Shown here piece by piece: positions 6,001-12,000 of a stretch of DNA of 64,000 nucleotides. Each line of letters starts with the position of its first letter. Within the stretch, counting starts at the first letter, position 1. The notes beneath the pieces were generated by a model. It was not told where the DNA came from, did not search any database, and saw nothing but the letters and a program-made list of their open reading frames with translations. Origin of the DNA: Lytechinus pictus (taxonomy: Eukaryota); assembly GCF_037042905.1 (NCBI RefSeq), contig NC_087254.1, forward strand, positions 9,424,001 to 9,488,000. The letters are read 5' to 3'. A program made the translations under genes and the position numbers.

Positions 6001-9000
6001 CGACCCTAAATTTGAGGTGGGTTGGACGGACCCCCTCCCCCATAGAATTGCTGTTGATAAGGTAACTTTTTTTTTCTCTTGTCAATTGCGTTTCCTCCGC
6101 CCCCCCCCCAACTAAATTCAGGTAGATCCCCCCCAAAAAAATTTGTGGTCCCCCCAAAAAAGAAAATTATAACAAATCAAAAAAGGATCTTCGCTACCGA
6201 TCGGTGGTTATTAATGTACAACAAATTTTTTCACAAGCAAAAAATAGTCTTTAATAGCAAAAGCATGGCATTTTCCATTAAATTTTTTTGGGGGATGGCT
6301 CTAAAAAGGGAAGGGGGCATGAGCCGGGTGTGGCATTTTACGACATTTCAGGGGATCCGGTAGCGATGGTACCCGATAGCAGAACCTCTATATTTCACTG
6401 AAAAAGTAAGAAACCCAACTTTTTCTTAGATTTTAGACCTCCCCCCCCCCCCATTTGCTGTAGGGGCATGTCCATTGGCTCTTAATAGGTACACTAGAAA
6501 GTTTTTTTTTTTTAGTCTTAAAATTTGAACCCCTCAGCAAGTACATGTGTAAGTAGTGCAAGTAATTTGCCCGGGGGGGGGGGGATTTGAGCCCGATACC
6601 CCTTAAACCATTTACAGCGCTGTCCCCCCCCCCCAGACCAATATTTATACCATGTATTAAATGTATTCATTGTATCATCAAATTGATATTCCCTTTGGAA
6701 ATTTCTTTTTTTTTTCTATTCAATTTACCCGTATAAGACCACGAATGGGACTAAAGAAAATCATTCTGAATAGAGGGAAGAAGATAATCCCTGACACACT
6801 ACAGTGAATCATACTCTTAAAATGAGTTGTATTTTTTTTACAATGATTTATTTTTTTCAAAACAGTAAGTGTGAACCGTTTAATTCTTAAAATAATCACT
6901 TCTCTGATAGGCTGGAATTTCATTTTTTGTTAATAATTTACACATCATAAAAACAAACACACATATCATTCAATACTAAATAAATTCATCATTCATTGAG
7001 TCATTGTTCACATATTATTTGTCAATTTCAATTTATTCAGAAAGAGCTGCATTTAAATTCCAAGTCAAAATATAGCACAAGTCCCAAATAACTAACCACT
7101 GTTTATTGGTTGAAAATCAAGTAGCGTATGAATTTGAGTTGCGTGTGATTGTGCAACTATTTCTGCAACAGGACCCGTATTGCAGTTATGAATAACTATA
7201 AAATATCACAGAATTATTATCTCAACCTCTTGGCAAAATAATTGAATTATTAACAAACATTGTAACATTTACTGTTTATTTATAACTGCAGGTAATCAAG
7301 TTCCCACAGGCTCCTGACGAAGTTCGGGCAACAATGACATCCTTTCATGAGATTGCAGGAATGCCTAGTATTGTGGGTGCCATCGACTGCACCCATGTCA
7401 ACCTGTATGGGGCAACCCTTGGGGATGAAGAATATATATATGTCAACCGCAAAGGTCAACACTCTATAAACGTGCAGCTCATCTGCAATGCTAAGTTCTT
7501 GATTACCAATGTGGTCTCGAGGTGGCCGGGCAGTACGCACGATAGCCGGATATTAAGGGTAAGTTTGAGCTACATTTATACTTGCCAATGTTTTGACGTA
7601 ATCCTGTTTGCACATACATGTAGTTTGAAACTGAAAAAGATAACTTTACATGGAGACAAATGTTTAGTTTCTCAGCTAATCAAATAGAATCACTGAACAG
7701 TTCCAAAAGTACATTCATACGCAAACCTTATACACTGTATGTACATTAATAAAATATATGTACTTTAAAAAATATGTACAGTGCGTCCCACAAAAAACGA
7801 AACCGAGATTTATTGATGATTTATCATAACTTAATCACAAATCATGCGTGAATAAGAAATAATCTAAGTAATATCAGATGAAAGAGGAGATTCTAAGCTT
7901 TACATTGGTAGGTCATTTGTCTATTGTATTTGTGATTAAGTTATGATAAATCGTCGCTTAATCTCGGTTTCGTTTTTTCTGGGACGCACTGTATATTAAC
8001 TTCACGTGACTTTTTTGTGGCATGCTTGTTGGGTCAAATTTTATAATTCACTTATTTCTTTTTTTAAAACCAATAGAGAAGTGCCATCAGCCAAAGATTC
8101 GAGAGAAGAGAACTGAGGGGTATCTTGCTCGGCGATTCAGGATACAAACTAGAACCATGGCTCCTTACCCCAGTTAGAGTGCCACAGAATGAAGCAGATC
8201 AAGCATACAACAGGTTAGATATTGATAATAATATTAAGATTCATTATATCAATGTCCAAAGTAAGACAAATATTTATATATATACATATATATTTCAAGA
8301 TGTATGCATATAGAATGTACATGTAGCTATAAATAGATTGAATAAATAGTTTCTTCTTGAATAATCTATGTGCATATTAAATATGGCAAGATATACATAG
8401 TTTGACAATTTTTTGTAATACAATTCGTTTGAAAATTAAAGCACATGCTCAGAGGAATCCTATGATCAGACCTATAAGCCATAGACAGTATGGCCTTAAT
8501 TCTTTCCTCTATAGTGAATTCCTTGATTCACTGTACAATAGTTGATGCTTAAGCATACCCTACGAGCAAAATTTGTTCTCTCGACAATTAAAAACCATTT
8601 ATAATTTTATGTTTGAATATTATTTATACCAGAACTTGCTCATATATACATGTATGTCTTCACAATCCAACTGTATATATACTAAAGTACTGTGCAACAG
8701 TGTTAAGTGTATCATGTTACTGATATAATTCACCAGTAAAAATGTTTACAGGTGCAGATCTGGCCAATTTAACAGAAATGATATAGACCATCATCTTTCT
8801 ACACATTTGCTATAGCAGATTCCATAAATGAGAATGAGAGGAAACACAAACATAGGTCACCAATGATAGATGAGCATAATACATTTTTTATACATTAGGA
8901 ATATAGATCATATAGATGTCATGTCACCTTGTTCGGTAAGGCATTGCAACCCGTCTCATCTTTTGATTTGAAGGGTCGTAAAATAGCAGAAACATGAGAG

Positions 9001-12000
9001 CTCCAAGCTAATGAAATGGAGAATGTCAAATATGACAGAACATGAGTGTAGGAGTCGGTGGAACAACATGAAAAGGCCAATATATATTGTAACAAGTGGA
9101 ACGCATCTGGCAGTCTCGCCTGCATTACGCTATTATAGCAGCAGTGCTAACTTTGAAAACTACTATAAAATAATCATTCACAAAAACACCATTCATATAA
9201 TGACATAATACCACGTTCATTGACCCTAAATGACCTTTGACCTTGATCATGTGACCTGAAACTCAAGCAGGATGTTCACTAATACTTGATTAACCTTATG
9301 CCCAAGTTTCATGAACTAGGTCCATATACTTTCTAAGTTATGATGTCATTTCAAAAACTTAACCTTAGCTTAAGATTTGATGTTGACGCCGCCGTCGGAA
9401 AAGCGGCGCCTATAGTCTCGCTCTGCTATGCAGGCGAGACAAAAACAATAAATATGGACCGTAATTTCAATTTCATAACCACATTATGAATTTAAAAACT
9501 ACATATATGGTGTGTACTAGTATACAACAAATTATTTCTCAAATGGTTGTCTTCTTGTCATTCAATTCAACAGAGCACACTGCAAAACCAGAGTTCTAAT
9601 AGAACAACTCAATGGACAGATTAAAAGCAAATTCAGGTGCCTGAATGGACAGGGGATATCAATGGTCCCAGAGAGAGCAGGCAGGATCATAATTGCATGT
9701 TGTATTCTACACAACCTTTCAAAACAGATGAACGAGCCAGAAGATAACCATGATATTGACATAGAGGAGGTCGACCAGCCAGCCGTTCAAGAGGCAAACA
9801 ATCCAGCTGGACTCGCTATGAGGCAAAATATTATCCAAACTTATTTCACATAATTTTATGTTAATTAGAAAGTATACTATTAATAAAGTTTACTCTCTCG
9901 GATAGCTTGAATTACAAAATGTTAAAGAAAATCAAACATTACTAAAAAGTATTAATTTGACAGTACCCCTAGCACAGAAAAAAGGAAGAGGAGGTCCTTG
10001 TTTATGAAGTGGATCAGCTGACAAAACACCAAAAGAGGCTGGTTTTGAAATAAATGTGATTTTTTAGTCTACACTGACTTAATTCATAGGTATTTATTGA
10101 ATTCCAAAAGAATATAAAGTATATTGCAGTCTGGTACATTCATTAATGAAAGGATCTTTCAAAAGTATTTGCTATTCGAATTGGCTACTCAAGCACGGCT
10201 TGATTAATTTGTGACTTTTGAGTCTACAGTGACTTAACTCACAAGTTTTCGAAAAGAATATAAAGTCTATTGCAGTTTGTCTGTAACTACATTTATTACT
10301 GAAAGGATTTCTTTTAAAAGTATTTGCTATTCGAATTTGCTACTCAAGCATGGCTTGATTAATTTGTGATTTTGAGTCTACAGTGAATTTAATACAGGTA
10401 TTTTTAAATTTCCAAAACAATCTATAAATTCTATTGCAGTTTGTCTGCAATAACATTCATTACTGTCAGCATTTGTTCAAAATAGTTAGCTATACGTATT
10501 TGCTGTTCAAGCATGGCTTGGTTAATTTGGAAAAGCCTCTCTTGGTATTCTGTGTGCTGATCCACAACAGAACACGGCAGCTTCCTCTTTTTACTTTTCT
10601 TAGGAACAATAGTGCAACTCGTTTTACTCGATCCCTCATTTTCCTCTGCCACCTCTCCAACCTCCTCAACTTCATATTCAGCACTCATGGTACTCAACAA
10701 CTCCGTGTCTCTTGTATTCTAAGCAGAAAGAATGATAAAAATCAAACATTACTAAAAAGTATTAATTTGACAGTACCCCTAGCACAGAAAAAAGGAAGAG
10801 GAGGTCCTTGTTTATGAAGTGGATCAGCTGACAAAATACCAAAAGAGGCTGGTTTTGAAATAAATGTGATTTTTTAGTCTACAGTGACTTAATTCATAGG
10901 TATTTATTGAATTCCAAAAGAATATAAAGTATATTGCAGTCTGGTACATTCATTAATGAAAGGATCTTTCAAAAGTATTTGCTATTCGAATTGGCTACTC
11001 AAGCACGGCTTGATTAATTTGTGACTTTTGAGTCTACAGTGACTTAACTCACAAGTTTTCGAAAAGAATATAAAGTCTATTGCAGTTTGTCTGTAACTAC
11101 ATTTATTACTGAAAGGATTTCTTTTAAAAGTATTTGCTATTCGAATTTGCTACTCAAGCATGGCTTGATTAATTTGTGATTTTGAGTCTACAGTGAATTT
11201 AATACAGGTATTTTTAAATTTCCAAAACAATCTATGAATTCTATTGCAGTTTGTCTGCAATATTATTCATTACTGTCAGCATTTGTTCAAAATAGTTAGC
11301 TATACGTATTTGCTGTTCAAGCATGGCTTGGTTAATTTGTGATTTTAAGTCTACAGTGAATTTAATACAGGTATTTTTAAATTTCCAAAACAATCTATGA
11401 ATTCTATTGCAGTTTGTCTGCAATATTATTCATTACTGTCAGCATTTGTTCAAAATAGTTAGCTATACGTATTTGCTGTTCAAGCATGGCTTGGTTAATT
11501 TGAAGAAGCCTCTCTTGGTATTCTGTGTGCTGATCCACAACAGAACACGGCAGCTTCCTCTTTTTACTTTTCTTAGGAACAATGGTGCAATTCGTTTTAC
11601 TCGATCCCTCATTTTCCTCTGCCACCTCTCCAACCTCCTCAACTTCATATTCGGCACTCATGGTACTCAACAACTCCGTGGCTCTTGTATTCTATGCAGA
11701 AAGAACGATAAAGGGAAACAAAACAAAACATTAATAATCCTTAGTGCAATAGTATAGCATATGGGAATGTTTGAGAGCACATCTTTTAATTTTGCTCCAT
11801 CAAGTCTATTTTTCATTGATCTTGTGACTCCAAATGTAGTCTAGTCAGAAAAATGAGGCAAGTCTTAAGTTTATCTAACAAACTGTTCTCAAGATATTTA
11901 AAGAAAAGACCTTTTCAAATATTGTATTGAACTGTGACCTTGATCTATGAACTTGAGACCCAAATGCTTAGTAAGCTCACTGTCAATCATATATGCATAC

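What the first reader, a model, noticed from the sequence alone, without database searches (positions are those of the whole stretch)
8820..9115. Intronless copy of a Myb partner gene embedded in the transposase's own intron
Seen: a plus-strand sequence in transposase intron 3 is colinear with exons 1-2-3 of the element's minus-strand Myb gene but lacks the 3.1-kb and 1.4-kb introns. The exon1|2 junction is reproduced (aaatgag|aatgagaggaaaca). It is diverged and broken by stops and frameshifts. Inference: either a retrocopy of a Harbinger Myb mRNA that landed within a Harbinger, or a relic of a second/ancestral intronless partner gene, which would imply later intron gain. It is inverted relative to the functional gene, so ECD or Myb read-through transcripts would carry it antisense and could supply silencing small RNAs.
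Basis: partly seen in the sequence, partly recalled or inferred. Interest (0 to 1): 0.75.

Follow-up and report, generated by a model that had tools for sequence, protein, structure and literature searches.

The report
Spliced Myb pseudogene inside its transposon
A decayed 305-base fragment copied from the spliced messenger RNA of a sea-urchin Harbinger transposon's Myb helper gene sits inside an intron of that same transposon's transposase gene; it is a real but inert molecular fossil, an odd location for an ordinary kind of pseudogene.

Summary
Window 8786-9090 (+) is colinear with the end of exon 1, exon 2 and most of exon 3 of the minus-strand Myb/SANT partner gene. That gene belongs to the 16-kb Harbinger element at 4045-20006 of Lytechinus pictus. 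The 3,093-nt and 1,434-nt introns are absent from the copy.

- **Significance:** exons 2 and 3 each align at z about 8, and no shuffle reaches the observed score. A 21-nt exact run spans the exon 1|2 junction.
- **State:** the copy is 73-77% identical to the parent. It has stops in every frame and many frameshifting indels.
- **Extent:** It belongs to a hyper-abundant repeat (9091-9445) that inserted later.

Four other Harbinger lineages keep intron 2 at the same codon, and the two with data also keep intron 1. One of these lineages is in Diadema setosum. Both quartet counts and ML trees place the copy with the local parent. Its intron absence is therefore derived and RNA-mediated.

The copy lacks a poly(A) tail, a target-site duplication and the mRNA's 3' half, so the insertion route is unresolved.

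The small-RNA idea is untested and weak. The one RNA run laid showed no reads on the unique part, and only one 21-nt exact match to the mRNA survives.

The parts
8786..8832 (+). Copy of the 3' part of Myb exon 1: about 17 nt of 5' leader, a decayed ATG, and the conserved exon end AAATGAG
   Evidence: The anchored alignment fits the exon 1 end (shuffle fraction 0-0.0003) and not the intron 1 end (0.1-0.2). No homology is detectable further upstream.
8826..8846 (+). Exon 1|exon 2 junction reproduced as a 21-nt exact run (AAATGAG|AATGAGAGGAAACA)
   Evidence: Longest exact matches are 7 nt to the exon 1 end and 14 nt to the exon 2 start, and they are contiguous in the copy (sequences).
8833..8966 (+). 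Copy of Myb exon 2, 77% identical, with +3, +1, +10, -1, -1 and +4 nt indels and in-frame stops
   Evidence: tblastn E 2e-4.
8975..9090 (+). Copy of Myb exon 3 (core of the Myb/SANT domain), 67-73% identical and frameshifted; it stops about 19 nt short of the exon's end
   Evidence: The surviving ORF piece gives a weak Myb_DNA-bind_4 match.
9091..9445 (.). Later insertion of a hyper-abundant repeat with 13-nt inverted termini (GTCTCGCCTGCAT); not part of the copy
   Evidence: Summed contig depth is 1e5-1e6, with loose ends at 9091 and 9445 in all four runs. Inverted repeat I8. A contig in run X2 at depth 8.85 appears to join 8990-9077 to 9441 onward without the repeat (inferred from equal depth).
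8125..8214 (+). Transposase exon 3, upstream flank of the host intron
   Evidence: The same exon exists in L001 and in Diadema.
9574..9853 (+). Transposase exon 4, downstream flank of the host intron
   Evidence: The same exon exists in L001 and in Diadema.
19676..19696 (-). Parent Myb exon 1 (MALPTNE, donor GTAAGG)
   Evidence: Homologous exon 1 in L001 (MASPNE) and Diadema (MSNTNE).
16469..16582 (-). Parent Myb exon 2
   Evidence: Exon boundaries are conserved in L001, L005 and L007.
14884..15034 (-). Parent Myb exon 3 (Myb_DNA-bind_4/5)
   Evidence: The annotated protein XP_063961356.1 joins it to exon 4.
13573..13685 (-). Parent Myb exon 4 ([10 protein letters not shown]...); not represented in the copy
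   Evidence: No homology to it in or after the copy.

Best explanation
Window 8786-9090 is a dead fragment of reverse-transcribed, spliced Myb mRNA, that is, a processed pseudogene fragment. The source was this Harbinger lineage's own partner gene or a very close relative. The cDNA piece runs from about 17 nt before the start codon to about 19 nt before the end of exon 3. It was inserted in inverted orientation into the pre-existing third intron of the transposase gene. Since then it has decayed neutrally while the element lineage carried it along. The repeat at 9091-9445 inserted later at its 3' edge. Shown here: the homology, the absence of both introns, the reproduced exon 1|2 junction, the grouping with the parent, and the neutral decay. 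Inferred: the RNA intermediate. Speculative: the insertion route. The fragment lacks a poly(A) tail, a target-site duplication and the mRNA's 3' half. That fits capture of a cDNA fragment during double-strand-break repair, or a LINE-mediated insertion later truncated, better than a textbook LINE event. I assign it no present function.
For: Homology is significant for exons 2 and 3 (z 8.3 and 8.5), and the exon 1 end is anchored with a 21-nt exact junction. Intron positions are ancient. Intron 1 follows M..NE in the parent, in L001 (second L. pictus family) and in Diadema setosum. Intron 2 lies at ER|V in the parent, L001, Logan L004/L005, TARA L002 and Diadema. Intron 3 lies at T|GGG in all of them. 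Quartet site counts give (copy,parent) 12-15 against 0-3 for each alternative, in both exons. In the ML trees, exon 2 separates {parent,copy} from the rest at 94% UFBoot. Exon 3 supports {parent,copy} at 83% and {parent,copy,TARA} at 99%. The parent tip is 0.00-0.02 and the copy tip 0.50-0.57. With TARA as outgroup, the copy branch has 23 changes spread 4/9/10 over codon positions, which is neutral. The parent branch has 5. Transposase intron 3 exists without any Myb fragment in L001 (533 nt) and in Diadema, so the intron predates the insertion. There are no TIR remnants beside the copy. Homology does not extend into the promoter.
Against: No retroposition hallmarks are present. There is no poly(A) tail, and the best candidate target-site duplication is not significant (p 0.13). 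The fragment keeps the 5' part of the mRNA and lacks the 3' part, the reverse of typical LINE-mediated copies. Junction 2 cannot be read at base level, and the sequence before the exon 3 homology resembles the 3' end of parent intron 2 weakly (p 0.04). The parent's transcription start is unknown, so 'begins within the mRNA' is not proven. The placement relative to the TARA relative is unresolved by parsimony. I could not search the L. pictus assembly for a closer, intronless donor.
Confidence: 0.72

Rival explanations
1. DNA-level fragment of a different Harbinger element whose Myb gene was already intronless. It would have arrived by nested transposition, or as filler DNA copied from another locus, and then been truncated at both ends.
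For: No poly(A) tail or TSD. The fragment is truncated on both sides. Earlier scan notes mention a compact 3.1-kb Harbinger in the same genome (unchecked, sequence not available to me). The copy's long branch (0.5) could include divergence of a donor family.
Against: There are no TIR-like motifs or subterminal repeats near it. Homology stops about 17 nt before the ATG, not in a promoter. ML puts it next to the local parent with a near-zero parent tip, which does not suggest a separate long-diverged family. The copy-branch changes are spread evenly over codon positions, so there is no sign of a period as a functional gene. The exhaustive protein search with exon 3 found no closer intronless relative. 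Even if this rival is right, the donor's intron loss would still be RNA-mediated.
Confidence: 0.17
2. Relic of an ancestral or second intronless partner gene of this element. On this view the functional gene's introns 1 and 2 were gained later.
For: The copy lacks both introns and sits inside the element. The hexamer AATGAG occurs on both sides of parent intron 1, which superficially recalls an insertion-generated intron.
Against: The same intron positions occur in four other lineages, including one in a different sea urchin order, and the copy groups with the parent inside that set. The copy carries both AATGAG hexamers, so it does not show a pre-insertion state. Rooting on the copy's branch would require the parent to have evolved about 30 times more slowly than its functional relatives. 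No promoter homology accompanies the copy.
Confidence: 0.04
3. A maintained antisense module. Minus-strand transcripts (ECD pre-mRNA or Myb read-through) would pair with Myb mRNA or feed small-RNA pathways, damping the element's activity.
For: The orientation is right. One 21-nt exact match to the spliced mRNA survives. The predicted intermolecular duplexes are stronger than shuffled controls: -95 against -51 kcal/mol for exon 2 and -103 against -75 for exon 3. A second version of the element in run X2 also carries the 3' part of the copy.
Against: The decay is neutral, with frameshifts and substitutions spread evenly. The duplex energy is only about 35-40% of a perfect antisense. The best 21-nt windows other than the junction match 19/21 and 17/21. 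The laid RNA run has near-zero reads on unique parts of the transposase, the copy and the Myb last exon. Related families in L. pictus and Diadema lack any such insert.
Confidence: 0.04

Closest known systems
Processed pseudogenes (retrocopies) of cellular mRNAs
   Same: It is colinear with the spliced mRNA and lacks introns exactly at the splice junctions. It is non-functional and decays neutrally.
   Different: It has no poly(A) tail or target-site duplication. It is a 5'-proximal fragment, not a 3'-anchored copy. The source gene belongs to a DNA transposon, and the copy lies inside the same transposon.
MSANTD2P1, the intronless processed pseudogene of the Harbinger-Myb-derived gene MSANTD2 in simians (PMC9392472)
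   Same: It is a retrocopy of a Harbinger Myb-like coding sequence that has lost coding capacity. That paper also raises possible small-RNA regulation by such pseudogenes.
   Different: MSANTD2 is a domesticated host gene, and its pseudogene lies elsewhere in the genome. Here the parent is still part of a TIR-bounded transposon, and the copy is nested in the partner transposase gene.
Endonuclease-independent or double-strand-break-associated cDNA capture (described for LINE-1 and yeast Ty1 cDNA; cited from my own knowledge, not checked here)
   Same: Insertions of this kind are typically truncated and lack both a poly(A) tail and a target-site duplication, as this one does.
   Different: No break site, microhomology or reverse transcriptase source can be shown here. 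This is a proposed route only.
PIF/Harbinger two-gene transposons of echinoderms (L001 in L. pictus, L007-L009 in Diadema setosum)
   Same: The host element shares with them a convergent five-exon Myb gene, a four-exon DDE_Tnp_4 transposase and identical intron positions.
   Different: Only the window's lineage carries the Myb cDNA fragment in transposase intron 3.

Membership tests
Processed pseudogene / retrocopy | Colinear with the spliced mRNA; parental introns absent at the exon junctions | tested here: met
   Introns of 3,093 and 1,434 nt are absent. The exon 1|2 junction is a 21-nt exact run. Junction 2 lacks any intron-sized insert but is not readable base by base.
Processed pseudogene / retrocopy | The parent gene had the introns before the copy arose (derived intron absence) | tested here: met
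   Intron positions are shared with L001, L004/5, L002 and Diadema. The copy is sister to the parent by quartets (12-15 vs 0-3) and by ML (83-94% UFBoot). The rooting rests on a branch-length argument, not on an outgroup.
Processed pseudogene / retrocopy | 3' poly(A) tract | tested here: not met
   The copy ends at 9090 inside exon 3. There is no A-run there or after the repeat at 9446.
Processed pseudogene / retrocopy | Flanking target-site duplication | tested here: inconclusive
   The best candidate (ATATAGACC / ATATGGACC) is no better than random flank pairs (p 0.13). At this level of divergence a TSD could have decayed.
Processed pseudogene / retrocopy | No homology to the parent's promoter or introns | tested here: met
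   The upstream 60-140 nt are not significant (p 0.32-0.6). The downstream sequence is not significant against exon 3 remainder plus intron 3 or exon 4. There is a weak resemblance to the end of intron 2 (p 0.04).
PIF/Harbinger autonomous element (the host element) | Terminal inverted repeats, DDE_Tnp_4 transposase and a Myb/SANT partner gene | tested here: met
   17-nt perfect TIRs at 4046-4062 and 19989-20005. DDE_Tnp_4 at E 4.6e-12 and Myb_DNA-bind_4/5 at E about 4e-6.
   No TIR-like match within intron 3 at up to 3 mismatches. The only terminal inverted repeat there belongs to the unrelated repeat at 9091-9445.
Small-RNA source locus (piRNA/siRNA) | Small RNAs mapping to the locus | not testable with these tools
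   Only one long-RNA run could be laid, and it had near-zero reads on the unique parts. No small-RNA library was available.

The most novel reading that the evidence does not exclude
The fragment records cDNA of a DNA transposon's own mRNA being captured inside that same transposon and then inherited by transposition-competent descendants. If such captures recur, they would be a route by which intron-rich DNA transposons exchange sequence with their own transcripts. That could include intron loss leading to compact elements. The inverted copy may also once have acted as a built-in antisense brake on the Myb partner.
Probability: 0.07. Interest if true: 0.6.

Novelty: new member of a known kind. 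Interest (0 to 1): 0.3.

Why it matters
The copy shows that mRNAs of DNA transposons, like host mRNAs, are reverse-transcribed and reinserted in sea urchin germlines. It also shows that an autonomous Harbinger lineage can carry such debris in its introns for a long time; the copy's branch is about 0.5 substitutions per site.

The comparison gives a by-product. The five-exon Myb and four-exon transposase structure of this Harbinger clade is conserved between Lytechinus and Diadema. These introns are therefore old, which argues against recent intron gain in this family.

Practically, the copy is a lineage marker for this family. It has no demonstrated function, so the wider significance is modest.

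Tried and rejected
- **Intron-end resemblance:** the first local alignments suggested the copy also resembled the 3' ends of parent introns 1 and 2. Anchored tests rejected this for intron 1 and left intron 2 at a weak p 0.04.
- **Continuation past the repeat:** I tested for homology after 9446 to the exon 3 remainder plus intron 3, which a P0006-like intron-3-retaining isoform would predict, and to exon 4. Neither was significant. For one search only, the exon 3 remainder and exon 4 references were laid end to end inside a local script.
- **Promoter homology:** a possible decayed E2F-like block upstream of the copy was not significant.
- **Target-site duplication:** not significant.
- **cDNA editing signature:** the raw G>A excess (20 against 8 C>T) disappears after normalising by base content (0.27 against 0.23, p 0.81).
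- **Exact look-up:** the look-up of transposase exon 1 found nothing.
- **Word search:** the search with transposase exon 4 found no candidates. The tool's length window makes exon-sized queries blind to full-length proteins.
- **Word search with P0005:** it found only relatives of the other family, in L. variegatus.
- **Rfam:** a scan of intron 3 found nothing.
- **Promoter/terminator scan:** the bacterial consensus scan was irrelevant to this genome.
- **Read laying:** it could not show whether organism B carries the copy. The unique part had no depth there, and a hole proves nothing.
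Full report
**Context.** The window is from Lytechinus pictus, assembly GCA_037042905.1. Locus L003, fetched through the annotated protein XP_063961356.1, is 100% identical to window 3537-24989.

- A PIF/Harbinger element spans 4045-20006, with perfect 17-nt terminal inverted repeats.
- It lies in an intron of a minus-strand SGT1/Ecdysoneless gene. Its exons match PF07093 profile positions 1-52, 124-183 and 183-230, at 25209, 21483 and 20624 downward.
- The transposase is on the plus strand in four exons: 4276-, 7334-, 8125-8214 and 9574-9853. 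It matches DDE_Tnp_4 at E 4.6e-12.
- The Myb/SANT partner is on the minus strand in five exons: 19696-19676, 16582-16469, 15034-14884, 13685-13573 and 11691-11404.
- A duplicate of the last Myb exon lies at 10718-10431.

**The observation.**

- Local alignment of 8700-9140 (+) to exon 2 scores 96 (shuffles 40.8 ± 6.6). Alignment to exon 3 scores 97 (40.0 ± 6.7). No dinucleotide shuffle out of 500 reaches either score.
- BLASTN and tblastn find the same colinear pieces.
- Exon 1 alone is too short for a local test (z 0.9). When the alignment is anchored at the exon 2 start (8833), the copy's upstream 14-80 nt fit the 3' end of exon 1. The shuffle fraction is 0-0.0003 and the random genomic control gives 0.0006-0.0016. 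The fit to the 3' end of intron 1 is not significant (0.10-0.21).
- The longest exact matches, 7 nt to the exon 1 end and 14 nt to the exon 2 start, abut in the copy as one 21-mer at 8826-8846.
- Between the exon 2 and exon 3 homologies the copy has 49 nt where the parent has 37 exonic nt. The 1,434-nt intron is therefore absent, although the junction itself is unreadable.
- Identity is 77% for exon 2 and 73% for exon 3. Several indels are not multiples of three, and stops occur in every frame.

The true span is 8786-9090.

**Boundaries.**

- Upstream, homology ends about 17 nt before the ATG equivalent. The next 60-140 nt show nothing (p 0.32-0.6).
- Downstream, the copy stops at 9090, about 19 nt short of the exon 3 end.
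- Reads and contigs from four runs show that 9091-9445 is a hyper-abundant repeat. Summed depth is 1e5-1e6, with loose ends exactly at 9091 and 9445. It has 13-nt inverted termini.
- After the repeat there is no homology to the rest of exon 3, to intron 3, to exon 4 or to any other part of the parent gene.
- In run X2 (same species label), pieces of equal depth (8.85) cover 8990-9077, 9441-10095, 11068-11237 and 11400-12439 at about 93-98% identity.
- I read these pieces as one 2,077-nt contig. It would be a second version of the element that carries the copy's 3' part but lacks both the repeat and the tandem duplication. This is an inference from equal depths.

**Which origin.** An exhaustive protein search with exon 3 returned seven proteins. 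Their contigs gave four independent relatives:

- L001, a second Harbinger family in L. pictus (XP_063963028.1).
- L004-L006, Logan contigs of unknown source.
- L002, a TARA metagenome scaffold and the closest relative (72% nucleotide identity in exon 3).
- L007-L009, three copies in Diadema setosum.

All relatives keep the same gene structure:

- Intron 1 follows the sixth or seventh codon, and exon 1 ends in CAAATGA(G/A) in the parent, L001 and Diadema.
- Intron 2 lies between ...ER and V... in all five lineages.
- Intron 3 lies at T|GGG in all of them.
- The transposase has the same four exons in L001 and Diadema. Their intron 3, 533 nt in L001 and about 900 nt in Diadema, contains no Myb-like sequence.

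So the introns of both genes predate the divergence of these families, and the fragment is specific to the window's lineage.

**Placement of the copy.** All analyses were run exon by exon.

- Three-taxon counts with L001: parent=copy 68 sites, copy=L001 20, parent=L001 39.
- Quartets with any two of L001, Logan and Diadema give 12-15 sites for (copy,parent) against 0-3 for each alternative, in both exons.
- ML trees (HKY+G): in exon 2 the split {parent,copy} against the rest has 94% UFBoot. In exon 3, {parent,copy} has 83% and {parent,copy,TARA} has 99%. The parent tip is 0.00-0.02 and the copy tip is 0.50-0.57. The other functional lineages lie at least 0.7 from the shared node.
- The only way to keep the copy ancestrally intronless with a single intron gain is to root the tree on the copy's own branch. 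That would require the parent to have evolved far more slowly than its functional relatives, and the pseudogene to have evolved more slowly than constrained genes. I reject it.
- With TARA as outgroup, the copy's branch has 23 changes spread 4/9/10 over codon positions, which is unconstrained. The parent's branch has 5.

The intron absence is therefore derived and simultaneous at two junctions. That is the signature of a spliced RNA intermediate.

**Mechanism of insertion.** This part is not resolved.

- There is no poly(A) tail and no significant target-site duplication (p 0.13).
- The fragment keeps the 5' part of the mRNA and lacks the 3' 60%. A classic LINE target-primed insertion would keep the 3' end.
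- The pattern fits either a later deletion or capture of a cDNA fragment at a chromosomal break. Break capture is known from my own reading for LINE-1 and Ty1 cDNA, and I did not check it here.
- The other L. pictus family has an annotated isoform (XP_054775492.1, P0006) with introns 1-2 spliced and intron 3 retained. A transcript of that shape would explain why the copy ends at exon 3. The anchored test for intron 3 sequence after the copy is not robust (p 0.04 at one length).
- A raw G>A excess suggested cDNA editing, but it vanishes after normalisation.
- A DNA-level origin from an already intronless relative cannot be excluded, because I could not search the assembly by similarity. Nothing supports it. 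There are no TIR remnants and no promoter homology. There is also no closer relative in the protein search.

**Function.**

ECD and Myb are both minus-strand, so their transcripts would carry the copy in antisense.
- The rRNA-depleted RNA run (about 6% of it read) has essentially no reads on the unique parts of the transposase, the copy or the Myb last exon.
- No small-RNA data could be examined.
- Similarity to the mRNA is now one 21-nt exact run, then windows of 19/21 and 17/21.
- Predicted duplexes are better than shuffles but reach only about 35-40% of a perfect antisense.
- Neutral decay and absence from sister families argue against a maintained role.

**Comparison with what is known.**

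- This is a processed-pseudogene fragment. Its unusual features are its source, a DNA transposon's accessory gene, and its location, the partner gene's intron in the same element.
- The nearest published case I found is MSANTD2P1, a processed pseudogene of a domesticated Harbinger Myb gene (PMC9392472).
- Two literature searches found no report of a transposon-borne retrocopy of its own gene. That is a limited search, not proof of absence.

**Verdict.** The retrocopy reading is supported at about 0.7, the ancestral-intronless reading is rejected, and the silencing idea is untested and unlikely. I score interest as modest.

Noticed in passing
window 9091-9445: Hyper-abundant repeat of about 355 bp with 13-nt inverted termini (GTCTCGCCTGCAT). 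Summed contig depth is 1e5-1e6 in both organisms. RNA reads are very abundant and strongly strand-biased (first mate on + about 6000 against about 56). Many 'goes back' joints to 9215 suggest tandem or rearranged copies. It has no Rfam match.
   Followed up: partly
window 9928-11712: Tandem duplication of the 3' end of the Myb gene. There are two intact copies of the last exon (10431-10718 and 11404-11691, 96% aa identity). There are also four decayed partial copies of its C-terminal coding part (10155-10366 and 10965-11176). A contig in run X2 appears to lack the duplication. L001 also has a decayed C-terminal fragment downstream of its Myb gene (L001 15248-15295).
   Followed up: partly
window 7334-9853 and 13540-14990 (L003 genes): The NCBI annotation holds only partial models for both transposon genes. 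The Myb model is 84 aa (XP_063961356.1: part of exon 3, exon 4 and intron read-through). The transposase model is 213 aa and starts in exon 2. The full five-exon Myb (about 228 aa) and four-exon transposase are recoverable by homology.
   Followed up: partly
window 19760-19800 (-) and L001 9905-9930: A block upstream of the Myb start codon, GAATAT..ACGAGGATGCGC, is conserved between the window's family and the second L. pictus family. In L001 it lies inside the annotated 5' UTR.
   Followed up: no
window 41769-41785 (-): A Harbinger-type terminus (GGCCGGTTTCATAAAAC) with 2 mismatches to this element's TIR. A weak GPFH..-like hit to Myb exon 4 lies at 41934-41999. This may be a remnant of a related element.
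   Followed up: no
L009 1497-6867 and 10001-21922: One Diadema setosum copy carries a segmental duplication of Myb exons 2-4. They occur at 4733-6795 and again at 13237-15299.
   Followed up: no
window 14017-14587 and 35896-36483: A palindromic MITE-like repeat of about 570 bp in Myb intron 3, with a 76% identical copy elsewhere in the window. It is also very abundant in the read data (depth rises from 13700).
   Followed up: no
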